Translations under genes and position numbers: made by a program | The notes under the pieces: model-generated | What the model saw: only the letters and a program-made list of their open reading frames with translations | Database searches by the model: none | Told to the model about the DNA's origin: nothing | From: Diadema antillarum | Taxonomy: Eukaryota | NCBI RefSeq assembly: GCF_040938485.1 | Contig: NW_027272215.1 | Location: forward strand, 496,001 to 560,000 | DNA length: 64,000 nucleotides | Direction: 5' to 3' | Shown: one piece after another, positions 40,233 through 58,089 of the stretch | Layout of the letters: the number at the start of each line of letters is the position of its first letter | Position numbering within the stretch: the first letter of the stretch is position 1

Positions 40233-40995
40233 TGTGCTAAACAAGATCTATTTAACAGATTTTTGAACACTGAGATAAGTATTGGTAAACACATTTTCAT
40301 CTTCTTCAGAACCAGAAGGGCGGATTTCAGACAATCAAACTTGGTGAGGATCATTCCTAGTGGTTAGGGTTGTTGTAAGTTGTAAGTAAGTGTAGGACAA
40401 GTGCATTGGTATGAGATTTAGCATTCCAGGAGTAAGAATTTGATTAAGGTAATCAATAATTGTTTCAGGCAGGACTAGTATTCAATGCTAGCAATTTTGT
40501 TGGGGGGGGGGGGGGCATTTTCTGGCAAAGATATGGCAATGTATCGAGTCCCTGTGCTGCCACGTCACTTTCATAATACTGGGTCATGGGTGGCGATAAA
40601 CTTTTGATTTGTCTTTGTGATAATTGTGGAGGAGCAGAAAGTTACCAAAATGTGCCGCCAATGTCCTGTACATTTTGGTAAGTTTACCAAAATGTGCTGT
40701 AACAGTCTCACCTTTCATCATGATCACTCTGTTTTGGATATCTCTCCTGCTTCAAAACCAATATCTATCAATAAACATTAAATACCTCTTAGAATGGTAT
40801 CATGCTCTGTACAATTTCATATCAAGTGGTCTCCCATTATCTCACCAAAAGATGTTAGAATGCATTCAGGAAACAAATGGCTCTTTTATTTTGTACAATA
40901 AAAACAATAAGTTACATATTAAAATCTTAAACAACTAGTCCAAACAATTTTTATAATTTGATATGTAGTAATACATGTAAATCAGTAATGCTGTC

Positions 40996-41188
40996 ATAAT
41001 GTGTAGACTAAAGAAATTGATTATACATTTATTTTCTTGATAAGATAAACTAATCCTTTGAAAAAAATTATTGAATGAGATTGATAATAAAGCAAAATCT
41101 CATATTCTCCTGATATAGCAGTAAGCCTTACTTAAAAGTTAAATGCCAAACACTTTCTTAGCGACTGAATGTAAAATTTATCTGTACG
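40996..41188. repeat. ~190-bp direct repeat, copy 1 (copy 2 at 42369-42557)
   Basis: ataatgtgtagac...aaaatctcatattctcctgatatagcagtaagcc...aaaatttatctgtacg is present twice. Confidence 0.92.
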
Positions 41189-42280: not shown

Positions 42281-42368
42281 CAATCCGACTCTGTGATTTT
42301 TACTTGTTGCTTTTTGCAGACTGGACACGCTTTCCATTAAGCTGATAACTGTTGAAGGCCTTGCTATT

Positions 42369-42557
42369 ATAATGTGTAGACAAAGGAAATTGATTATACA
42401 TTTAATTTCTTGATCAGATAAACTAATTCTTTGAAAACAAGATTTATTGAATGAGATTGATAATACAGCAAAATCTCATATTCTCCTGATATAGCAGTAA
42501 GCCTTACTTCAATGCCAAACACTTTCTTAGCGACTCAATGTAAAATTTATCTGTACG
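42369..42557. repeat. ~190-bp direct repeat, copy 2
   Basis: See 40996-41188. Confidence 0.92.
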
Positions 42558-45590: not shown

Positions 45591-46468
45591 TAAAACATTA
45601 ATTTGTAGAAAATGAATTTACTTTATAATGATTTCATATTTATTTGATTGCCACAAGACCAGAAAGTCTGCTATCTAGAGATCCATTGCTCACGTATGCA
45701 GTACACACAAAGCAATTACTGGACTTCATCGAAACATCATCCAGCATCCATGCCCCCCTCCCCTCCACCCCCAGTGCCAGGGCATATGGGTGTTTCCATT
45801 TATTTGGGGGCCAGTTGTCAATTCATGGGTATGCAGTTTGTAATGGCCCTTTTCCCCTTCTGAACAATTACACACATTTTTAAAATATTTATATCTTTAT
45901 TAAATACATATGAAGGTATTCCACCCCAAAATTGGAATTAATATAAATCTCGGGATTTTTATTTTTGGCGCCAAATAATCTGTGGTGTCCCATGTTTTTT
46001 TTAGGCTTTTTTGTGACATATAGATAATGTCCTTTGTTTTAAGTGCTGTAAAATATTCATATGATATTTGAATTTAATTGTTTTGCTTATAATGTGAAAA
46101 AATCACGAATAAACATATATCCTAAGAAGTTGCCTATTTTGCAACCCATCGTTATTGTGCAATCAATGAATCAACGTTGGGGTCGCTACGTAAATTTTCG
46201 TGTCCCAAACATTACGTAGGGATTCCCATTTTCCCACGGTCTGTAAATTTTTAAAATAACGATAGCAAGCGGCAAATCAGTTGTTCTTCACGTAGATAAA
46301 CATAAATTAACTAATGGGTATATTTAGCAAAAACATCCAGCACCGTATGTCGAAAATATTACAACTTTATCGAAAAATACGAACATTCGTGTCCCAACGA
46401 TTTATTTACGTCGTAAGAATTCGCTTGAGAATGGAGTAGTCCATCGGTCATTTTTATGAATGAACGAC

Positions 46469-46531
46469 CACGTGATTCAACGCCCCGGAAGTGCTTCTTA
46501 CAACGTACTTCTTGACAACGGTCGCCATTTT
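46469..46531. promoter_or_regulatory. Promoter-like motif cluster (E-box, ETS, YY1)
   Basis: CACGTG at 46469, CCGGAAGT at 46485 and CGCCATTTT at 46523, within a CpG-rich patch. Confidence 0.3.
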
Positions 46532-47219
46532 CTTCCTATCGACGGAGAACGAAAACAGTTTTCGTGTCCCATCATTTACGATGCCCCTGTGGAACCTTTT
46601 TACGGTTGGGATTTGCCTTTAAGCAAGAAATTCGTGAGTAATTTCGTTCTTCCTTTAACTTATGTATCGTATTTTTGTATTTATTGATGCTCTTAATTTG
46701 TTAAAAAGTGCCAAAATACGTCGCAAGCGCGTGTTCGTCTGAGAAGCTTCCAAAGGGGCATTGTCGTTGTTGAACAACGTAAATATGGACACGAAAATTT
46801 CCGTTTCCCGATTTACGCTGTCATCTTGTAGCCGCCCACTGTTTATCTTAATTGTGCTATTAATTAATGAATGATAAGTTTATGTGTAAGCGGTTAATTT
46901 TAATAGTTATATGAAGCGATTTGATGAAAATTGCGACGAATTGAAAGGCGTATTGAAAGGCAAATTGAAAGTTGTAAACCCATCGTAAATTGTGCAAAAG
47001 AAAACCAATTAAATCGTGTCCCGATTTACGTTGTGTATAATTTTGTCAATTGTAGCTTCTGGTTACATTTATGATTTATTATTCTGCATGTTCAGATATC
47101 TAGATCTAGACTATATACTTTGAGATACTACCAGTCGCATTTAATAAAGGATTTGTGATTAAAATCTCAACAAATTACCGTACATGTGGGACTGGGAGAA
47201 CTCTGCACCTGTGCCTGTG

Positions 47220-47760
47220 GTAAACTCGGCCCCCGACAACAACTGGCTCAATAAAACCGGGTTTTTCGTGCTATTTCAATAATAATTCATACATCAACAA
47301 CTTACTGAAAGCAATTGTAAGCTGTTGATGTATGAACTACAGGGGTGATATTCCTCAGATTTAAATCGGAATTCCGATTTTTAGTTTTTTTATTTTTTTA
47401 TTTTTTATTTTTTTTTTTTTTTGGTACAAGTTATTAACAAGATCTAGATCTATATGATTTCTTGTTTAAATCATAACATGTTTGTCCTGATACAGTAAAT
47501 CTTAAGCCCAAATTTCCCCTCCAGGTATGCACAAAATTGCACAATTTAAAGTCCCAAAATGCAAAAAGTCCTTACCGTACGAGGGGGACACCCCCTCCCA
47601 CACCCTCCCCCCTCCTCGGTCGCTCCGCTCCCTCGCGGAAGTAGACTTAGACCCTGTCTATTTTTTTTTTCAAGAGTGAATATCACCCCTGGAATTACTA
47701 TTGCAATACCAAGAAAAACCTGATTTTATTTAGCCAGTTGTTGTCGGGGGCCGATTTTAC
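47220..47760. mobile_element. Palindromic foldback element with a nested MITE
   Basis: gtaaactcggcccccgacaacaactggct...aataattc (47220-47288) mirrors gaattacta...agccagttgttgtcgggggccgattttac (47692-47760). Confidence 0.8.
47340..47691. mobile_element. Nested MITE
   Basis: TIRs caggggtgatattc / gaatatcacccctg. Flanks gaacta / gaatta (5 of 6 identical). Confidence 0.8.
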
Positions 47761-48316
47761 GTGTGTATGCGGTGTATGTTAACGTGTGCAGGGCCAAAAT
47801 ATGCACGAAAAATTCCCTCTGTAAACGGGACACCAAAAGTCTTGACGTCCCATTTACACGTGGAACAAAAACCAATTTCAATGGAATATAGGTTTCCTGT
47901 GATAAAATTTAATTTGCATGTCTACACATACTTAATGAAGATTGTCAATAGCACAAAATTACTGAATTTGAAAATGCTAACAGCTCCACAACATGTACTA
48001 AAAGTTCCCCGTGTAAACGGGACACCAAGGTCTTGGCGTCCCATTTACATGTGGAACAAACACCCAATATACTTAAGTATAGGTCTATCGTATAGCATCT
48101 GTCTACGGATGAGGGGAGCTGACCGACGAAAGTCAATATATAAATGAGAAGCCCCCGAATTAGAGACAGATCTTATCGGTCTAATGATTATTAAGCTGTC
48201 CAGGAATGGTTCACATATTACTGCAGGCCTATGGTCCATTTTTGTCACAAAGTTTTCACATATTAATGTCAACCAATGTACTTTGCTGTTGTAGGTTTTG
48301 CTTGCGGTGCTCCAAA

Positions 48317-50876
48317 ATGCGACCGTACACGGGGAATGGAAAAGCTTCCACAAGCACCACTGCAAATGGCTCGAAAGAAAAGCGTAAGAAAAAAAGGCAG
48401 CCACTACCATACACCTTACGAATTAGGTGCGAGCATAGGAATCTAGATGAAGGTACTTCCACTACTCCCTTGCCATCCAAATCAAAGGGAAAAGGAAAAA
48501 CGCAAAATTGGCGAGACAATCTAAAACAGAAAAACCCTGAGAAGCATGCTGAATTGAAAAAACGTGACAAGACCTACAGTAGGTACTACCGGCTACAATG
48601 TGCCACTGCGGAAGAAACTTTGAAAAAAAGAAATCTTTCAAAAGAAGAAAGAGAAGAAGCCGAGATGTGGAAGAAAAGAAAAGAACGTAATAATGAAACT
48701 GCAAGAAACAGAATGAGAAAGATGAATGCAAGAAAGAAGGAAGATGAGAAGAATGGAAAAACAAAAAAAGCCATGACTAGAAGAGAGTGTGAGAAGAAAA
48801 GAGCATATGAAGCAGAGAGGAAGAGGAAACAACGTGCTAAAAAAAGTGCAGCAGAAATGGCCAAGATAAATCAAAAAAGAAGAGAGAAATATGCGGCAGA
48901 GAAATACATGGAGATTCAGAAGATAAACGAAGAAAAGGATCGAAAGTTGAAAGAGATGGAACAGAAGGTAAAAGATGTGGAAGAAAAGTTACGTGAAAAG
49001 GAGATTGAGATGCGTGAAAAGAACGCCGAGTTAGGTGAAGACGCTATCGATGTGAGATCTAATACTGCCAGACGAAAGAGCCTTCAACGCGTCAGAAGAG
49101 CTTTTCCAAAACAAAGATCGCATTTTGTTTCTACCACAGTTGACCTCGTACAGAAAGCTTCACCACTGAAAGCTGCTGCACTGGAGAAGGCAGGAATAAC
49201 AGGCAGAAATCCATTGCATGAAGGAGTGATGGAAGCCGTCGCAGATGCCCTTTCAGGACCGAAAAAGTCTGCAAAACGGAAGCAAATGGCCATGTCTCTC
49301 GCTGCTATAAAGAAGTATAAACAACAAAGAGCGGCTGGAAGATACTTCGGTTGTAGCCGCAAACTTCTGGGAAATGCAATAAAAAAATCAGCAGGCCGAA
49401 GAGCGCTCTCATTGAAAACAATTAAACTCGTCCAAGAATTCTATGAAGCCAACTCAAATACTTTGCCAGATAAAAAACTCGTAAGTAAAAAAACCTACAA
49501 ACCAAGACATGTAATGGAGTCATCCATAGCAAATCTATACCAGAAGTACACCAAAGCACATCCAGATAACCCAGTAAGTGCAGGGATGTTCTACAGCTAC
49601 AGACCAAAACATGTAAAAACTAGAGGACAAGCCAAATATATCGGTTGTCTTTGTGAATACTGTGAAAACATAAATTTGAAAATACAAGCGATCAACAGCC
49701 TCCACAAAGGAACCTTCAAAGACGGCTATGATGTTGTCAAAGCAACAATGTGCCCGAAACCACCGGGATGGGATTTCAACCATCATTCCTGTATCAGCAG
49801 AAAGTGCAAGAAATGTGGCGTGGATATGTTGGACCAACGACTGCAACCTATCCTTGCAGACCTTGACAAGACCATGATTGTAAAGTGGAAACGGTGGACA
49901 ATCATAAAAACAACATGCCACACCAAAAAGGGAACCAAGGAAGTGAAGAAACGTAAGCCAATAGAGAAACAAGGAACAGTGCAGGATTTGGTAAAGGAGC
50001 TTAAGGAGGAGATAGACCCATTCAGTGAACACTTGTTTAACAAGGATTGGCAAGGTAATCAAGAAAAAAATCTCCGAAAGAATCTGCAAATGAATGAGGT
50101 ATTGGGGGTGTATGATTTTGCTGAAAATTTCAAGTGCGAGCATCAGCGAGAGGTTCAAAGCGCATATTATTCACACGATGCTGCAACAGTCCACCCTGTG
50201 GTCACATATTACATCTGTCCGACATGTTTGGAAACTGTGACGGAGAGTATTGTAATGGTTAGTGATGATTTAACCCACGACCACCATCTTGTGCACGAAT
50301 TCCATCGCAGAGTCACCAAGCATTTAACTGCAACCAGGGGGTTGAACATTACTAAGTTTTACCGTTTCTCTGACGGCTGCAGTAGCCAATATAAAAGCAA
50401 GGGACCTATTTTGGACATAAGTTACGGGAGGGAGGATTTTGGACACATCATACATCACAACTATTCGGGGACTAGGCATGGTAAGGGCACCAGTGATGGC
50501 GAGAGTGGAGTTGTTAAGAGGAAAGCAAGTGAAGCAGTCAGAGCAGGAACTGCCACAATCAGCACCCCAGATCAACTATATCATTTTCTGAAATCCAATG
50601 TTACAAAAGAAGCTACCGAAGACAAATGCTGCTGTCCATTTAGGAGATCGGTTATTTTTGTAAAACATGAAGAAGTTTCGCGAGAGCGGCGAGACGGGAG
50701 GGCCCCAAGAACTGTTAAAGGAACAAGGAAGTTACACAGTATCAAGAGCACAAAGGGAGGAACAGTTGGCACAAGGAATCTCTCCTGCTTTTGTTACCCA
50801 TGTCTCAGAGGTGGTGGTGGCAGATGTGCAAATGCAGCTTATGTACAGCCTTGGAAGCAAGTTCAACTAAGTACAG
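48317..50876 (+). CDS. Sola2 transposase, main exon (K/E/R-rich coiled-coil N-terminus, DDD core)
   Basis: Motifs CLCEYCEN, DFAENF...EVQSAYY...HPVV, SDDLTHD, FSDGCSSQYKS, HGKGTSDGESGVVKR, VKGTRKLHS and LSCFCYPC. ATG at 48317 follows an acceptor at 48293-94. Donor ag|gtaaat at 50877; unspliced read-through stops at 50884. Confidence 0.88.
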
Positions 50877-50886
50877 GTAAATAAAC

Positions 50887-51428
50887 CCGGGGGAGGGGGG
50901 AGGGGGCCTCCATTGACAAGTGAATATCATGCGTGTCCAAGAAAACACGTAAAAAGGGTATCTTTTTTAAGGCTGGGCATGTAACGTACGTAACGTGATA
51001 AGGGTGTCAAAAACACTAAAATACTGAAAAAATGGTATACTTTTCGCACGGAATCTTACGTGTTAAGGGTTCGATTTGCGAGGGTATTAAAAAACACTAT
51101 TATACCTAAAAGGGGGAACTTTTTGAGCCAAAACTACGCGTTTAGGGTCCGATTTGCGAGTGAGGTAGGCTTATAAATATAATAAAAAAGGGATCAGCGT
51201 GCACTTATAAAATGATGGGGTTGTTAAATTATCGTTGTAACCTACTTGCTTAGGGGGTCAAATTATCGGAATATGTGTTGAGGATACGATTTCGTACAAA
51301 ATACTTGTTAAGGGTAAAGTTTCACACGCCAATACTTGTTAAGGGGTGCTTTTTCAGAACTGGGAAAATACGTGTTTAGGGTGCTTTTTGAAACCCCATG
51401 GACGCGCATGATATCCACCGTCACTGGA

Positions 51429-51467
<39 letters not shown>
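50887..51467. mobile_element. Mutator-type MITE with a perfect 9-bp TSD
   Basis: taaataaac|ccggggg...ggcctcca.tgac..gtg.atatcatgcg.gtcca ... tggacgcgcatgatatccaccgtcactggaggccc..ccgg|taaataaac. Confidence 0.92.
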
Positions 51468-51469
<2 letters not shown>

Positions 51470-51945
51470 AATAAACTTGTTATGCTAGATCAAAAAATGA
51501 ATACTGTTAACCACTTAATAAAGTCATTTTGGGTAATTGCTTATTGTTCACATCAATTACCAAAGCATGTGGCCAGTAAGGGTAAATTTCAATGTAGATG
51601 CTCGAATCATTGTAGTGAAAGAAATACAACTATTTATGTACTTTTTTGGGGAACAATTTTGTGTCTTAATTTTTACATGAAAAGTTCACTTTTGAAAGCT
51701 TGCACTTTATATCCAATGCTATATGTTACAGATGACTTCCTAGAAAGTTTGTTCAAGACATGTCAGAGCAGAGATTCTTAAAACTTACCGGTTTATGCGG
51801 TGGTGGCCTGCGGCTGACATCTATCGACCTTCAATTCAAGACACTTCCAGTACAACCTGTAGGTCTATATTGTATCATGCACTGCTCACAACCTCCTATA
51901 CACACAATTTATGTTTCTGTACAATTTATTTTGTTGTCATTACAG

Positions 51946-52227
51946 CAAAGGTGACCACTAGCCATGACGCCCCCAGCCATGACACAGCCAGGCGAGCTAG
52001 CCAAGACGTTGGAGCCAAGCAAGATGTCGCCCCCAAACTCCCTGATCATGATGATGCTCCCCATGTCACCCCCAAACTCCCTGATGATGATGAAGCTTCC
52101 CATATCAACCCCAAACTCCCTGATCTTGATGATGCTTCCCCATCTGTAGATGACACCGAGTCCGAGAGTAAATGCGACAACAGCGGAGTTGACCAAAGCC
52201 AGACCATGGCAGATGACAGTGATAAAG
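51946..52227 (+). CDS. Sola2 transposase acidic linker exon with three 13-aa repeats
   Basis: tacag acceptor and gtaatg donor, phase 1/1. PKLPDHDDAPHVT / PKLPDDDEASHIN / PKLPDLDDASPSV (39-bp period). Confidence 0.7.
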
Positions 52228-52597
52228 GTAATGTGCGACTAGTATGTATACACAATGTACAATGCTTTATTAGTAAAGATACACAACAAACTGTTAAAAA
52301 AATGCATTTTAAAGTGAATTTACTTCTGAAAATGTGGAAATGTCGTTATAGATCTGAAGGAAATGTCACGGTTATGTATGATGGGGTTAATAACTTTGCA
52401 TCAGTCATTTTTCAGGCGGCATGAAAAATCTTAACAATTTGCTTTAGACCTCAGTTCCAAAGGCAAAATGGTTAGATTTTTCCACAATGCCCTCAAAATA
52501 ACTGATGCGCAGTTATTAACCTCTAAGTAGTATTTTAGAACAACTTAATACAAATTGTTATTAATCTTGATTCAATTTGGTTGTGTTTATCAAATAG

Positions 52598-52695
52598 GTG
52601 GAGCTACTGATATGGTAAAGGTACATGATTTTGTAGCCGTCAGAGTGGAAAGTGCTGGCAAAAAGAACAAAGGAGATCAGATGCATGTTGCTAAG
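52598..52695 (+). CDS. Sola2 transposase exon, start of the C-terminal beta-barrel
   Basis: aatag acceptor and gtaagt donor, phase 1/0. GATDMVKVHDFVAVRVESAGKKNKGDQMHVAK. Confidence 0.7.
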
Positions 52696-52855
52696 GTAAG
52701 TTCTCTTTAAATCATTGTCAGGACCTAACTCCCTACATCAAGTTACTCAGTATTTCATTGATACAGAGCTTCCATGATCATATTTATACAGCTACACTGT
52801 GTTCAGAAAGATTCAAAATTATATTTTACTCTTCATTTTTGTGTCTAAATTACAG

Positions 52856-53077
52856 GTTGCTTCGGTGCTTGAAGATGGATACAGCCTGTCATATATGGTA
52901 CAAAGCAGCGGAAATCTTTATACCTGGCCACAAGGAGACGAAGTCTATTTCACCCATCCACAACGCGATATAATATGCAAACTTCCAGGACCAGAATATG
53001 TTTGGGTTGGGTCACGCCTTCTAAATAGAATGGACCTAACAGATGCTGAAAGACTTTTTCAAAAAATAGAACAATAG
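52856..53077 (+). CDS. Sola2 transposase last exon (Tudor/SH3-like barrel, stop codon)
   Basis: tacag acceptor, phase 0. VASVLEDGYSLSYMVQSSGNLYTWPQGDEVYFTHPQRDIICKLPGP...*. Confidence 0.7.
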   Translation, partial: VASVLEDGYSLSYMVQSSGNLYTWPQGDEVYFTHPQRDIICKLPGPEYVWVGSRLLNRMDLTDAERLFQKIEQ

Positions 53078-53310
53078 TACAATAGAAAAGTACTGAACTA
53101 TTTACCAAGACAGCTCTGTGACATTTGTGTGCTTTTGTAGTAGTGCTAGTGCATATTGAAAAATGAAAACCTGTGCGGGTTTTGGTCCCTATTCTGTTAT
53201 GAGACCATTCATACGCAGGCCTTGAGTTTTAAAAATGGTCTGGTGTGCTAAAAATTCCACTCCTCCAGATATTTAGGTGTGCTGTAGGTATGCATACGTA
53301 GCGGTAATAA

Positions 53311-53621
53311 ACTGAATTAATAGGTTTTTAAACTTCTATGCTACTTAAATTGACGACCTCACGTCATGACGTCAAATGAGATGCCTGGGGTTGGAAATTG
53401 ACCCCGTCTGGGACAACCTCTTGACCTCCCGCAACAAAGGGGGAGGGGACGAGACATCTCATTTGACGTCACCAACTTTGACGTCATCAGAGGTTTCCTA
53501 GAAACACTAGCAACAATCAGAGCAGTAACATCCGCTGAAGATGCTGGTTGATCCAGCGAAAACGTTCCAGTGAGTTCGTCAATTTAAGTAGCGTAGAAGT
53601 TTAAAAACCTATTAATTTAGT
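53311..53621. mobile_element. Penelope-like retroelement fragment with inverted ends
   Basis: 52-bp inverted repeats at 53311-53362 and 53570-53621, with an internal CTGAAGA...GAAAACGTT motif typical of Penelope-like repeats. Confidence 0.55.
53528..53574 (+). ncRNA. Minimal hammerhead-ribozyme-like motif (probably degenerate)
   Basis: CUGAAGA (53535-41), stem II GCUGG-UUGAU-CCAGC, GAAA, palindromic AACGUU, then C. Stem I pairing is poor. Confidence 0.4.
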
Positions 53622-55020
53622 CTCAATATAATTCAAAATTAACTCCATGAAGTGTAAGTATGTTTAAAACTTGATGTTAGTTGAAACTTTTATGCTTGAT
53701 AAGACTTGATGTTTGTTAATAATTGATGTTTGTTAAAATGTTAACATATTTGAGACTTCATCGGGTTAGTGCAATTGAGTTTTTTGATAAATATAGGAAA
53801 ATACACACATTTTAAGGGGTGTTACAAGCCTTGAATGTATGCAGTTGTATTTGTATGATGGAAATAAGATGTCAAAAAACAAAGAAGAAGTAAAGAAATT
53901 GAAACACAAAATCGCTTCTTTCTCGATAACTATATTGCACTAACCCGACGACTTTCAACTGACAATCCTATTTCTACCACAAATTTGAAATGTGGACACA
54001 TGAAACTGAAATTTTTGAGGTAAAGAAATGCCTCTTGCTTACACAATTTTATTTCCATACTGTCAGACAAAATACAACCTGTTGGAAATGGTGTGGATTA
54101 ACAAATCAGTATGAGACTGAAAGCTTTCTCTTTATTATACTTCATTAAGATACAGCTTTTTATTCGTTTTTCTATATTCACAAGGTGCTATGGTATTTTA
54201 TTTTTACAGTATTAAGTTAGTAGGTCTATTACACATTATAGTCTGTCGTGTACATCCTAGAACAGTCGTCAACACTTGCAATGGCAAGCGCTGACTGTTC
54301 TAGGATGTACCCAAATTGCAAAATCAGGCTATAACAAACCAATATATTAGTATTTGAACTTGTATTTTTTTTCACACAGTACTAAAATATAACCAAGAGA
54401 GTGTACTATTGAAGTGCAGTAATCTTTTCTTTGTACAATGTATTAATATGAAATGCAATTTTAGTTTTACTGCTCAATTTAAGAAACTGCAAAACCTTGA
54501 ATTTCCCCCAGATAGAGAACTGTCCACAGATCTATGTTAAACCTCATGGGCATAAAGAGACATGATGATCAGTGGAAGTTTAAATGGGTTTTACAGTTGA
54601 TTTCTGAAATGGAATATTGTTATTATACTGAAATGGAATGTTATTATTGTATTGAGCACCATATTTTGTGCAATGGAATATTATTATTAACAATAATAAT
54701 AGCTGCTGGTTCTTATATAGCGCATTTCAAGCTTGCAAAGAATTTCAATGCGCTTTACATTAGAAGCATAATCTACTTACAAATTACACTGTAAGTAGAA
54801 AACTATGATTAATTAAACAATAATCAAACATCAGTTCACACTTTTGAAGTAAAAGTTTTCTGTAAAAAGTGTAAGTTGAACTGCAATGTCCAATGTCCAT
54901 TGTAAAGTTTCCTTCTGTATAAAGTTAAACTGCAATGTCCATTGTTTCCCATTAACTAAGTAGCACTTTGAGCTTGAAACAATGGTGAGTGCGCTTCATT
55001 CACCCAGGTGCTATTACAGC

Positions 55021-55510
55021 CTATACTAGCTGGGAGGCTAACTTAGTCTTGAGTCAGTTCTTCATGGTGTAGTTGTTTGCCTGAACTCTTGCTAATGGGT
55101 CTTGCATGCTAGGCAGGGAGATTAATCTTCTACATCTAATTCTCTCAAATGCTGGACTTCAGTCTTGCAGGACTTCACACTTCAGTCAGGTGCTATACTA
55201 GCTGGGAGGCTAACTTAGTCTTGAGTCAGTTCTTCATGGTGTAGTTGTTGCCTGAACTCTTGCTAATGGGTCTTGCATGCTAGGCAGGAAGATTAATCTT
55301 CTACATCTAATTCTCTCAAATGCTGGACTTCAGTCTTGCAGGACTTCACACTTCAGTCAGGTGCTATACTAGCTGGGAGGCTAACTTAGTCTTGAGTCAG
55401 TTCTTCATGGTGTAGTTGTTGCCTGAACTCTTGCTAATGGGTCTTGCATGCTAGGCAGGGAGATTAGTCTTCGACATCTTCTTCTCTCAAATGCTGGACT
55501 TCAGTCTTGT
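55021..55510. repeat. Tandem repeat, 171-172 bp x3
   Basis: ctatactagctgggaggctaacttagtc occurs at 55021, 55193 and 55364. Confidence 0.95.
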
Positions 55511-58089
55511 AAAAGTAAAACTATGATTGGGAGAAAAGGGAAAGGGAAAGCAGATCAGATAATTTGCTCTACAGTATAAGATTATGTTACTCAAGCATCT
55601 GATTATTAATTTGACCCTGTGAACATTTTCAAATTCAGTAATATTGTGCTATTGACAATCGTATTCAAGTATGTGCAGACGCGCAGATTTAATGTTATGA
55701 CAGGAAACCTGAATTCCATTGAAATTAGGTGTTTGTTTCACATGTAAAGGGACGCCAAGACCTTGGTGTCACGTTTACACGGGGAACTTTTAGTACATGT
55801 TGTGGAGCTGTGAGCATTTTAAAATTCAGTAATTTTGTGCTATTGACAATCTTCATTAAGTATGTGTAGACATGCAAATTAAATTGTATCACAGGAAACC
55901 TATATTCCATTGAAATTGGTTTTTGTTCCACGTGTAAATGGGACGTCAAGACTTTTGGTGTCCCGTTTACAGAGGGAACCTTTTGTGCATATTTTGGCCC
56001 TATGTGCATTTTCCAATTCAGTAATTTGTGCTCCTGACTACCTAAGATGTATGCTTTCCAGTAGATTTAATTGTATCACAGGAAGCGGAAACTCCATTGA
56101 AATTGGGTGTTTGTTCCACGTGTAAATGGGACACCAAAACTTTGGTGTCCCATTTACACGGGGAACTTATTTTTTAATGCTTGATATTTCGCCATGTACA
56201 TAATGCAATCAGTTGAATGCTTTCAAAATAGTTTGAATACATCCTATACCACAAATTAGAGTGTTCTTTAGTTGGGTATTATTCAGTTTTGGTGTTTAAA
56301 AAAATATGTTGAACCAAGATGGGCCACAAAATGACAATGTAAAGGCCTCAATTGTGAAAATGCGGTCGCCCAAATATGGTTTTGGTCGAAACGAACTTTG
56401 AAATTCGACCAAATGTCATTAAATTTTAAAAAGACAAACTTAATCGAGTCTGGAAGAAGTATTAATTTGGTGTAAACTTTAATAGTTTTACTTACTTATA
56501 TATTTATGTATAAAAGACTTTTTTACATTTTGGTGTCCCGTTTACACGGGGAATTTGCCAGACGCGTGCCCATTTGAACTGTTCTTGCTCAGACAAACTT
56601 AATCGAATCTGGAAAAATTTACCGGTTTATAAAAATTAACACATTAGACCATCATTAGAAGAATTGTTTGAAAAGATTTAACCATTTTCAAATTTTGCAC
56701 TCTATGTCACACATTGGTACCTTAATAAATGGAAACACCCATATACGACATGCTCTTCTGTATGTCCAGATGCGTACAATCGAGCTCTCCGATCGGTCCT
56801 GAACGAATGGCGAGCAATGACCATGGAACATCCGCATCTCTACAGAAACGAAGCTGCAAGAAGTGGTTGGGCCATTCATTGTATCGACAATGGAAGAACA
56901 CAGAGATCCCACACCAGCTTTTGACGTCGCAATCAGAACCTGCTCCTAAGACCCAAACTTTCATTGTGAACGCCATACAAATTCCAAAGATCTGGATGGC
57001 CGGTTGAGTGTAAGAACGGCTGTAGGGTTTTAGCCAATCGCGACGCAAAAAAAAAAAACAACAGTCATACCTAAATACATGAGTGTAGGAATGGTTGTAG
57101 TTTGGGATACATCCTTGGAAATGCATTTTTTGGGTAGGAGATTAGTTTACCCCTGCGTTGGACCATATCAGTACAACCCTCCATTCCACACTAGGCATCT
57201 CCTGGGAAGAATGCCAAGTCATGGATTCATCATTTGCGATTATCTCCCTACAGGAATCAATGAGGCTACATTATCTTTCCTTCTAACTGGTAGGGAACTC
57301 GGACCAGGGATAATGCTGAGTAGTTTCTTCTCCATTCTGTCCCTAAGTGATGAATTAGCTCTGTCAACAGCTATGAACACAATTCCATCCCAATTGGAAT
57401 TTCCTAAACTATTACTGACCAGGCTATCAGCAATTTTGTGTCACTTTGGTTCAACTTCAATTCCCAGGCCCCGCAATATCCGTTTAACCATTTGAATGCT
57501 GCAGGCGATTATGCACACTGAACACCTGGTTGCTGATGCATAATAATGCATGTGTATCTCATATCATGCCTTTCAAAAGGAAAGAGTTTGGCCAAGACTA
57601 TTGCTTAAAATATGAAATAGTGAAGCATCATCCTCTCCTGATACCTCCACAGATCCTTCACTGAGAGGGCAGCTTCACTTCTATCATCAAAAGTTTCATC
57701 AAAACCCTTCTTCCCACTGTAGATCGCCATTTTGAATTGAGACTCTATAGACTCTATAGAAGAGAATACAGCATGATATTTCAGCGGATAATGACCACTC
57801 CATAGAGGAAGATATCCACACGACCTCGTGACAAAAGAGGAGGAAGGAGTCCTCAGACTAATTGCTGGATTTGTGCCTTTTGCAAGGTACGCAAAGATGA
57901 AGTCACCTCTTGGCATTAATGAAATGGTTGGCATTAATGAAATGGAGGGTGGCTGATGACAAGATGATCGATGCTCACATGTTCATGGAGTATACTTCAG
58001 TATGGCTAACATATCAGAACAGAGGAGGACTGTTCATAGTGCATGACAGATTGTATCGGGTGTCAGTGGGAAGACCAAAGAAAAATATA

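What the first reader, a model, noticed from the sequence alone, without database searches (positions are those of the whole stretch)
48317..53077. Sola2 transposase extended by splicing into a 1053-aa protein with a C-terminal Tudor/SH3-like barrel
Seen: the 892-aa ORF is only the first exon. Exons 48317-50876, 51946-52227, 52598-52695 and 52856-53077 have canonical, phase-matched junctions and sum to 3162 nt (1053 aa plus stop) with no internal stop. They add an acidic 13-aa-repeat linker and a VKVHDFVAV...V..V....Y.LSYM......YTWP..DEV...DII.KLP.P module. An additional exon candidate at 51732-51858 carries a frameshift, so including it would truncate the protein after DDFLESLFKTCQSRDS. Intron retention gives a core-only form of ~855 aa. 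Inference: the barrel could be a chromatin reader that directs integration, and alternative splicing could switch between transposase isoforms.
Basis: partly seen in the sequence, partly recalled or inferred. Interest (0 to 1): 0.72.

Follow-up and report, generated by a model that had tools for sequence, protein, structure and literature searches.

The report
Spliced jumping-gene enzyme with reader-like tail
This is the working gene of a young, roughly 11-kb jumping gene in the sea urchin Diadema antillarum; its spliced message adds to the DNA-cutting enzyme an acidic spacer and a small barrel shaped like the protein parts that read marks on chromatin. That barrel belongs to a large, apparently unnamed family also found on unrelated jumping-gene enzymes.

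Summary
All three introns have GT..AG ends and matching phases. A PacBio cDNA contig (L008) has exactly these introns removed, and the database protein XP_071477937.1, annotated at this locus, has the same exon structure.

The cDNA also shows a 5' non-coding exon ending at 46633.

The gene sits in a 10.95-kb DNA transposon (45788-56740). It has 17-bp terminal inverted repeats, ATAT duplications and arrays of a subterminal motif. At least four copies are about 99.8% identical.

The core is an integrase-like RNase H fold with three invariant Asp. The Sola2 label fits on duplication, repeats and motif order, but was not tested statistically.

The C-terminal 106 aa fold confidently (pLDDT 92) into a barrel plus helix. 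Structural matches are almost all Tudor, chromo-barrel, PWWP or BAH readers, at only Z 6-7. The module has 1144 relatives among cluster representatives, no Pfam model, and also occurs on a pogo-type transposase.

Chromatin reading and isoform switching remain untested. The extra exon at 51732-51858 is absent from the cDNA.

Another note of this scan (s1-217777) reports a chromo-barrel partner on a different transposon in this genome; I did not test it.

The parts
45784..45787 (.). left target-site duplication ATAT
   Evidence: Similarity between copies starts here. Flanks outside it are unrelated. The third copy (L002) has ATGT.
45788..45804 (+). left terminal inverted repeat GGGTGTTTCCATTTATT
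   Evidence: Perfect 17-nt inverted match to 56724-56740 (I12, 19, 74).
45788..56740 (+). whole autonomous DNA transposon, 10,953 bp
   Evidence: L002 and L003 align at 99.8-99.9% over exactly this span. A fourth copy is inferred from P0001, which differs by one residue.
46604..46633 (+). 3' end of a 5' non-coding exon (its start is unknown), donor TTC|GTGAGT
   Evidence: The first 30 nt of cDNA contig L008 align here and then jump to 48295. In this copy there is an in-frame TAA at 46620-46622.
46634..48294 (+). 5' intron; it contains the ATG at 48206 used by the RefSeq model
   Evidence: GT..AG, removed in L008. Low Illumina depth also covers 48094-48290, so unspliced RNA or an internal start is not excluded.
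47220..47760 (.). nested MITE-like insert with 69-nt inverted ends, present in all copies
   Evidence: (I4).
47790..48045 (.). inner inverted repeat, left arm, carrying GTGTCCCRTTTAC motifs
   Evidence: 256 nt, 97% complementary to 55746-56001. The motif occurs 8 times against 0.16 expected, always near the element ends.
48295..50876 (+). coding exon 1 (CDS from ATG 48317): basic coiled-coil N-terminus, Cys cluster, RNase H-like DDD core, CxCxxC..C cluster
50114..50116 (+). first catalytic Asp (D600 counted from Met 48317), motif DFAENF
   Evidence: Invariant in 50 homologues. Lies at the end of the first core strand in the model. Codon checked.
50372..50374 (+). second catalytic Asp (D686), motif FSDGCSSQYKSK
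   Evidence: Invariant; codon checked.
50495..50497 (+). third catalytic Asp (D727), motif HGKGTSDGE
   Evidence: Invariant; lies at the start of a helix; codon checked.
50877..51945 (+). intron 1, holding a 560-bp insert bounded by G- and C-tracts (50889-51448)
   Evidence: Removed in L008 and in 2 Illumina reads. Inverted ends (I14).
51732..51858 (+). candidate cassette exon; not used in the observed cDNA
   Evidence: 127 nt, and including it gives a stop. Absent from L008. It is 128 nt in copy L003.
51946..52227 (+). coding exon 2: acidic linker (23 D+E against 9 K+R) with three 13-aa repeats at 52024-52143
52598..52695 (+). coding exon 3: first strands of the barrel (VKVHDFVAVRV..HVAK)
52856..53077 (+). 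coding exon 4: rest of the barrel, the C-terminal helix and the stop codon
   Evidence: The same intron position is found in the Asterias homologue.
53078..53471 (+). 3' untranslated region, at least this far
   Evidence: L008 continues to 53471, with a rearranged hairpin region.
55746..56001 (.). inner inverted repeat, right arm, inside a 191-bp x 2.9 array
56724..56740 (-). right terminal inverted repeat
56741..56744 (.). right target-site duplication ATAT

Best explanation
**Shown**
- The stretch is the transposase gene of a young, autonomous cut-and-paste DNA transposon of Diadema antillarum. The element spans 45788-56740 and has 17-bp terminal inverted repeats, a 4-bp ATAT duplication and arrays of a TIR-like motif near both ends.
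- The gene has one 5' non-coding exon and four coding exons.
- The protein has, in order: a basic coiled-coil N-terminus, a Cys cluster, an integrase-like RNase H catalytic core with three invariant Asp, a CxCxxC..C cluster, an acidic 13-aa-repeat linker, and a 106-aa beta-barrel with a C-terminal helix.
- The predicted fold of the barrel is of the Royal family class (Tudor, chromo-barrel, PWWP, BAH).
- The barrel belongs to a large family without a Pfam model. It sits at the C-terminus of Sola2-like transposases in several animal phyla and of at least one pogo-type transposase.

**Inferred**
- The element is of the Sola2 type.
- The barrel, on its flexible acidic linker, tethers the transposase to chromatin (a methylated histone tail) or to a host chromatin protein. 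This would bias where the element lands, as chromodomains do for chromoviral integrases.
For: **Splicing:**

**Element borders, duplications and copy identity:**

**Motif arrays:**

**Core**
- Asp 637, 723 and 764 (P0001 numbering) are invariant in 50 homologues.
- The AF2 model has pLDDT 93.
- Model residues 136-334 match the catalytic cores of RSV integrase (Z 10.8), MMTV integrase (10.7), PFV integrase (10.3), IstA (9.9) and Mos1 (9.5).

**Sola2**
- PMC3627910 section 11 gives 4-bp AT-rich duplications (AWWT, including ATAT) and 12-22-bp inverted repeats.
- The Sola2_DFa-2 and PPa-1 proteins in its supplement show the same motif order, C.YC / DFKEN / SDGAKHFKS / HGKS..D (by eye).
- PMC5751038 states that Sola cores have no Pfam match, as found here.

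**Barrel**
- AF2 pLDDT 91.7, pTM 0.82.
- Structure hits are nearly all Royal family readers, including MRG701 (Z 7.2), PHF19 (6.9), DNMT1 BAH1 (6.8), MSL3 (6.8) and SGF29 (6.7).
- Foldseek gives SGF29 a probability of 0.99.
- Sub-threshold Pfam hits on members are to BAH, MORC2 chromo-like, Tudor_5, MBT and Agenet.
- Aromatic residues are conserved at the positions where Tudor cages lie.
- Net charge is -2, so it is not a basic DNA binder.

**Family size and spread:** 1144 hits, a pogo-type host protein P0207, and amphioxus, hemichordate and firefly members.
Against: - Structural Z scores of 6-7 lie in the range the tool calls common for models without a true relative. No Pfam reader model reaches threshold.
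- The geometry of an aromatic cage could not be measured. One consensus cage position (Tyr) is His in this copy.
- Comparing the window with the 97%-identical cDNA gives dN/dS 0.18 for the core. For the barrel it is about 0.53 from 18 changes, which is not significantly below 1.
- There are no data on insertion-site chromatin.
- The Sola2 link rests on feature matches, not on a scored alignment to reference Sola2 proteins.
- The cDNA contig is 97% identical, not identical, and carries a frameshift. It therefore comes from another copy or a related species.
Confidence: 0.8

Rival explanations
1. The barrel is a nucleic-acid-binding or transpososome-assembly domain. It would play the part of the SH3-like C-terminal domain of retroviral integrases, holding target or donor DNA, and would not be a histone-mark reader.
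For: The fold is SH3-like. Among the best matches are barrels that bind nucleic acid, namely Shuguo PWWP with ssDNA (Z 7.1) and MSL3 bound to DNA plus H4K20me1. The catalytic core is closest to integrases, which carry such a domain.
Against: The module has a net charge of -2 and follows a strongly acidic linker, unlike the basic integrase C-terminal domain. The best-conserved residues are aromatic ones at cage-like positions.
Confidence: 0.2
2. The barrel binds a host or element protein. Candidates are a methyl-arginine protein, as extended Tudor domains bind PIWI, a chromatin factor, or another transposase subunit. It would serve regulation, nuclear retention or multimerisation, not target choice.
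For: Tudor-class hits such as SMN and TDRD3 are methyl-arginine binders. The module has been attached independently to two transposase superfamilies, which fits a generic adaptor.
Against: No partner is known and there is no specific signal for it. Chromo-barrel, BAH and PWWP hits are as good as the Tudor hits.
Confidence: 0.15
3. Alternative splicing, by intron-1 retention or by inclusion of exon 51732-51858, produces a core-only protein of about 855 aa that switches or represses transposition, as with P-element isoforms.
For: Retaining intron 1 would end the ORF 2 codons later. Faint Illumina depth lies in intron 1. RefSeq models sister copies as 892-aa ORF-only proteins, and one as a 207-aa tail-only protein.
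Against: The only full-length cDNA is fully spliced and skips the candidate exon. Read depth (10-49 reads per run) is too low to call isoforms. Part of intron 1 is a repeat-like insert that may attract stray reads. The RefSeq split models are predictions.
Confidence: 0.12
4. The locus is a domesticated host gene derived from a transposase, not a mobile element.
For: RefSeq annotates it as a normal multi-exon gene, and homologues are annotated as genes in other echinoderms.
Against: It has intact terminal repeats and target duplications. At least four copies are about 99.8% identical at unrelated loci with identical coding exons.
Confidence: 0.03

Closest known systems
Sola2 DNA transposons (Bao, Jurka and Kapitonov 2009; dictyostelid Sola2 elements in PMC3627910)
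   Same: 4-bp AT-rich duplication (ATAT). Short terminal inverted repeats. A large element with a multi-exon transposase. Three acidic catalytic residues that are all Asp. The same order of motifs (C.YC, DF.EN, SDG...KS, HGK..D). No Pfam match.
   Different: The dictyostelid reference proteins show no such C-terminal barrel by eye in the supplement text, and some carry Fanzor passengers instead. The similarity was not scored here.
Chromodomain-bearing integrases of chromoviruses (Ty3/gypsy, e.g. MAGGY; Gao et al. 2008, as cited in 10.1101/2021.11.30.470311)
   Same: An RNase H-like integrase or transposase core with a C-terminal Royal family module. In chromoviruses that module directs integration to marked chromatin.
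   Different: Those are LTR retrotransposons with a classical chromodomain that Pfam recognises. Here it is a cut-and-paste DNA transposon with a larger barrel plus helix of an unnamed family, and its function is untested.
Chromo-barrel, Tudor, PWWP and BAH reader domains (MRG15/MRG701, MSL3, PHF1/PHF19, SGF29, DNMT1 BAH1)
   Same: A predicted SH3-like barrel, with a C-terminal helix as in chromo-barrels and PWWP domains. Conserved aromatic residues on the second, third and fourth core strands.
   Different: Z is only 6-7. No Pfam model passes threshold. There are nine strands, not five. One cage-like position is His in this copy.
Transposon and chromatin-reader fusions surveyed by Grau-Bove et al. 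(10.1101/2021.11.30.470311, section 10)
   Same: The same general phenomenon: transposable elements, DNA transposons included, recruit reader domains, mostly Chromo and PHD.
   Different: That survey relied on Pfam reader models, which do not detect this module. Neither Sola2 nor Tudor-type fusions with DNA transposases appear in the passages I read.

Membership tests
Sola2 DNA transposons | 4-bp AT-rich target-site duplication (AWWT) | tested here: met
   ATAT on both sides in the window copy and in L003; ATGT and ATAT in L002. Flanks beyond it are unrelated. The criterion comes from PMC3627910 section 11. No empty site was seen, so a 2-bp duplication is not strictly excluded.
Sola2 DNA transposons | short terminal inverted repeats (12-22 bp in the described elements) | tested here: met
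   A 17-bp perfect inverted repeat lies at the exact ends of the region shared by the copies.
Sola2 DNA transposons | RNase H-like transposase with a DDD catalytic triad | tested here: met
   Three invariant Asp in 50 homologues. The core model matches integrase and transposase catalytic domains at Z 8-10.8. That Sola enzymes are DDD is from my own knowledge of Bao et al. 2009; that paper is not held.
Sola2 DNA transposons | significant sequence similarity to reference Sola2 transposases | tested here: inconclusive
   Only a by-eye match of four motifs, in the same order, to Sola2_DFa-2 and Sola2_PPa-1. No Repbase or superfamily profile was on hand, and the reference sequences have no reference id, so I did not type them in.
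Royal family reader domains (Tudor, chromo-barrel, PWWP, BAH, MBT) | SH3-like beta-barrel core | tested here: met
   AF2 pLDDT 91.7. Nearly all of the top 50 structural matches are Royal family domains, at Z 5.5-7.2. This Z range is not decisive by the tool's own caution.
Royal family reader domains (Tudor, chromo-barrel, PWWP, BAH, MBT) | match to a curated sequence model of one of these domains | tested here: not met
   No Pfam hit for this protein. Only sub-threshold hits on a few of 68 members: BAH 4, MORC2 chromo-like 3, Tudor_5 3, MBT 2, Agenet 2. PDB profile search: ARID4A at E about 1.
Royal family reader domains (Tudor, chromo-barrel, PWWP, BAH, MBT) | aromatic cage of three or four residues | tested here: inconclusive
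   Aromatic residues are conserved at P0070 positions 996, 1014, 1030, 1039 and 1041 in 77-96% of 182 members. Position 1014 is His here.
Royal family reader domains (Tudor, chromo-barrel, PWWP, BAH, MBT) | binding of a methylated lysine or arginine peptide | not testable with these tools
   Needs peptide arrays or calorimetry with the purified barrel.
Splicing-regulated transposase isoforms (P-element type) | a stable alternative mRNA encoding a truncated protein | tested here: inconclusive
   One fully spliced cDNA. Illumina depth of 10-49 reads per run is too low. The candidate exon is absent from the cDNA.

The most novel reading that the evidence does not exclude
The C-terminal module is a so far unnamed branch of the Royal family of methyl-mark readers. 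Unrelated DNA transposases have acquired it repeatedly: Sola2-like and pogo-like here, and possibly the partner gene of a Transib-like element noted elsewhere in this genome. It would steer insertions to a particular chromatin state. DNA transposons of marine animals would then have a widespread, portable targeting device comparable to the chromodomain of chromoviruses.
Probability: 0.3. Interest if true: 0.7.

Novelty: new variant of a known kind. Interest (0 to 1): 0.5.

Why it matters
How cut-and-paste transposons choose their landing sites in chromatin is poorly understood outside a few model elements.

This element offers a young, apparently intact family with at least four near-identical copies. 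Its transposase carries a confidently folded reader-like barrel on a flexible acidic arm, and the same barrel sits on a different transposase superfamily.

That makes two things directly testable:
- whether DNA transposons use histone-mark tethering as chromoviruses do;
- whether this roughly 100-aa family, with more than 1100 cluster representatives and no Pfam model, deserves curation as a domain.

For annotation, it shows that single-ORF calls of Sola2-like transposases miss the C-terminal exons, and that the RefSeq start codon here probably lies in an intron.

Tried and rejected
- **Pfam on each exon:** no hit.
- **Word-index search with the barrel region of P0070:** 122 candidates, none scored, not even known homologues. 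I treat this as a tool blank.
- **Foldseek of the barrel against PDB:** nothing at E <= 0.001.
- **Foldseek of the core:** only weak RNase H-like hits. VIA-align gave the clear integrase match.
- **Papers not held:** Bao et al. 2009 and Yuan and Wessler 2011.
- **Literature searches** for a Tudor or chromo-barrel module on DNA transposases found no description. The library is partial, so this is not proof of absence.
- **First TIR motif pattern** was too strict, giving 3 hits. The 13-nt subterminal motif gave 8 hits against 0.16 expected.
- **dN/dS on the barrel** from the window/cDNA pair lacks power, with 18 changes.
- **Domestication:** considered and rejected.
- **The 207-aa tail-only RefSeq model as a real isoform:** considered and rejected, because its donor would be GC in a poly-C context.
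- **Joining exons:** The only joined sequence I used is the database protein P0070, by reference.
- **Reference Sola2 proteins:** I did not type them in from the paper's supplement, so that comparison stays by eye.


Full report
**What is at the coordinates**

The window is from Diadema antillarum. Locus L001, from assembly GCA_040938485.1 contig JBFRCO010001327.1, is 100% identical to window 38206-63077.

The 892-aa ORF at 48206-50884 exists.
- Donors are CAG|GTAAAT at 50876/7, AAG|GTAATG at 52227/8 and AAG|GTAAGT at 52695/6.
- Acceptors are ttacAG| before 51946, aatAG| before 52598 and ttacAG| before 52856.
- Phases are 1, 1 and 0. There are no internal stops, and the stop codon is at 53075-53077.

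**Independent support for the splice model**

- *The database model.* NCBI's own model for this locus is XP_071477937.1 (P0070, 1090 aa). It contains the three downstream exon translations at residues 892, 986 and 1018, and its first 890 residues equal the ORF.
- *The cDNA.* A PacBio RNA library labelled sea urchin metagenome holds a 3827-nt contig, L008. It aligns to 48295-50876, 51941-52229, 52596-52697 and 52854-53209 with all three introns removed at GT..AG.
- *Short reads.* Two oligo-dT Illumina reads from the same species label show the intron-1 joint.
- *Caveats.* L008 is about 97% identical to the window and has a frameshift, so it comes from another copy or a close relative. Depth in the poly-A runs is very low, 10-49 reads per roughly 12 million reads.

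**A 5' intron and the start codon**

The first 30 nt of L008 match window 46604-46633 and then jump to 48295. There is therefore a 5' non-coding exon ending TTC|GTGAGT and a 1.66-kb intron ending tgtAG|.

The ATG at 48206 lies inside that intron.

Homologues also begin shortly before the conserved LRIRC motif. A few Illumina reads cover 48094-48290, so an internal start or unspliced RNA is not excluded.

**The element around the gene**

- Sister copies L002 and L003 align to the window at 99.8-99.9% over exactly 45784-56744.
- The ends read ATAT|GGGTGTTTCCATTTATT ... AATAAATGGAAACACCC|ATAT, with unrelated flanks. L002 has ATGT on the left.
- A fourth copy is implied by P0001, which differs by one residue.
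- The coding exons of the three sequenced copies differ by one synonymous base.
- Inside the ends lie a 256-nt inverted repeat (47790-48045 and 55746-56001) and arrays of GTGTCCCRTTTAC, a motif resembling the terminal repeat. It occurs 8 times against 0.16 expected, always within the element. These are probably transposase binding sites.
- No other long ORF lies in the element.

**The transposase core**

In an alignment of 50 homologues, Asp 637, 723 and 764 (P0001 numbering; D600, D686 and D727 from Met 48317) are invariant, as are several Cys and His.

The AF2 model of residues 480-890 has pLDDT 93 and pTM 0.90. Model residues 136-334 superpose on the catalytic cores of:
- RSV integrase, Z 10.8;
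- MMTV integrase, Z 10.7;
- PFV integrase, Z 10.3;
- IstA, Z 9.9;
- Mos1, Z 9.5;
- TnsB, Hermes and Sleeping Beauty, also at Z 8 or above.

This is an RNase H-like DDD transposase.

**Is it Sola2?**

- PMC3627910 describes Sola2 elements with 4-bp AT-rich duplications (AWWT, including ATAT) and 12-22-bp inverted repeats. Both features are met here.
- Its supplement prints two Sola2 transposases whose motifs (C.YC, DFKEN, SDGAKHFKS, HGKS..D) follow the same order as CEYCEN, DFAENF, FSDGCSSQYKSK and HGKGTSDGE here. That comparison is by eye only.
- PMC5751038 notes that Sola cores match no Pfam family, as I found.
- I could not score the similarity, so the label is consistent but not proven.

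**The tail**

Exon 2 encodes an acidic linker with 23 D+E against 9 K+R. It has three 13-aa repeats. Homologues also have acidic, repetitive linkers, but of unrelated sequence.

Exons 3 and 4 encode 106 residues that fold, with a 12-sequence alignment, at pLDDT 91.7 and pTM 0.82 into nine strands and a C-terminal helix.

Evidence on the fold class:
- Foldseek finds nothing at E <= 0.001, but gives SGF29 Tudor a probability of 0.99.
- VIA-align lists almost only Royal family domains. These include MRG701 chromo-barrel (Z 7.2), PHF19 Tudor (6.9), DNMT1 BAH1 (6.8), MSL3 (6.8), a PWWP (7.1) and SGF29 (6.7).
- These Z values are in the range the tool warns is common, so the fold class is supported and family membership is not.
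- Sub-threshold Pfam hits on family members point the same way: BAH, MORC2 chromo-like, Tudor_5, MBT and Agenet.

**The module is a large family**

- A profile search of 1.84 billion representatives gave 1144 hits at E <= 0.001 and 34 at E <= 1e-10. Most are short C-terminal ORFs.
- The longer hits mostly carry the Sola2-like core.
- P0207 is a pogo-type transposase (HTH_psq, HTH_Tnp_Tc5, DDE_1) with the module at its C-terminus. P0211 looks like a second case, by eye only: it has the module and its N-terminus reads like the tail of a DDE_1 domain.
- Named members come from amphioxus, a hemichordate, a firefly and a starfish. Within the Sola2-like set the module is present in all five echinoderm classes and a snail.
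- The consensus is GDFVAVkY..WYvGqV...v.vkFM....Y.WP..D....dIv.kL..P. Aromatic residues are conserved where Tudor cages lie. This copy has His at one of those positions.
- The intron inside the module (HVAK|VASV) is shared with the Asterias homologue. A second Diadema family encodes the module in one exon.

**Constraint**

Comparing the window with L008:

| Region | dN/dS | Synonymous changes | Non-synonymous changes |
|---|---|---|---|
| Exon 1 | 0.18 | 40.5 | 28.5 |
| Linker (exon 2) | 0.81 | 1 | 3 |
| Barrel (exons 3 and 4) | about 0.53 | 6 | 12 |

The barrel value is not significantly below 1. The case for constraint on the barrel rests on its deep conservation, not on this pair.

**Mechanism**

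*Shown:* a spliced mRNA encodes core, linker and barrel in one protein, and the element is young and multi-copy.

*Inferred:* the barrel, held on a flexible acidic arm, tethers the transposase to chromatin or a chromatin protein and biases target choice, as chromodomains do for chromoviral integrases (cited in 10.1101/2021.11.30.470311).

Its slight negative charge argues against a role like the basic DNA-binding C-terminal domain of integrases, but that rival and a protein-adaptor role remain open.

The candidate exon 51732-51858 is absent from the cDNA.

**Novelty**

The gene model is already in RefSeq as an uncharacterised protein. Transposon and reader fusions are a known kind. A Royal-family-like barrel on Sola2-type and pogo-type DNA transposases, forming a large family without a curated model, was not described in anything I could read.

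I rate this a new variant of a known kind, of moderate interest.

Another note of this scan (s1-217777) reports a chromo-barrel partner on a Transib-like element in the same genome. I did not test whether it is the same module.

Noticed in passing
L005:6001-11581, L006, L007 (other D. antillarum contigs): A second Sola2-like family (P0027/P0074, 1081 aa, about 39% identical in the core) encodes an identical protein on 18 contigs, so it is also very young. Its barrel lies in a single exon. L005 and L006 each lie wholly within the span of a host gene: a UCH peptidase gene for L005 and a ubiquitin-TTD-PHD-SRA gene for L006.
   Followed up: partly
L004:6001-9616 (Asterias rubens LR699098.1): The starfish homologue LOC117292604 is 74-78% identical in protein to the sea-urchin transposase and shares the intron inside the barrel. 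That is high for echinoid against asteroid, so either horizontal transfer or strong constraint is likely.
   Followed up: no
window 47220-47760: A 541-bp MITE-like insert with 69-nt inverted ends sits inside the 5' intron. It is present in all sequenced copies, so it was in the master copy.
   Followed up: partly
window 50889-51448: A roughly 560-bp insert bounded by a G-rich and a C-rich inverted end lies inside intron 1 in all copies; a 35-nt poly-C run follows at 51431-51465. Copy L002 has a further private insert of about 500 bp at the position matching window 51178.
   Followed up: partly
L003:13203-14865 (matches window 51409-53077): RefSeq splits this sister copy into an 892-aa ORF model and a 207-aa linker-plus-barrel model (XP_071490301.1). 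The latter starts MISTVTG inside intron 1, and in the window's identical sequence its donor would be GC. It is probably a prediction artefact, but a tail-only product is not excluded.
   Followed up: no
window 55021-55509 and 55610-56166: Two tandem arrays in the 3' non-coding part of the element: 171 bp x 2.9 at 97%, and 191 bp x 2.9 at 79%. The second carries the subterminal motif.
   Followed up: no
window 40989-41188 and 42362-42557: About 200-bp direct repeats, 90% identical, showed up in the self-comparison. They bracket the stretch another first-reader note calls an Axin-RGS plus tandem Tudor fragment.
   Followed up: no
P0055 (978 aa): A homologue of this animal transposase is deposited as a protein of a Sedimenticola metagenome-assembled genome. 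This is probably eukaryotic DNA binned into a bacterial MAG.
   Followed up: no
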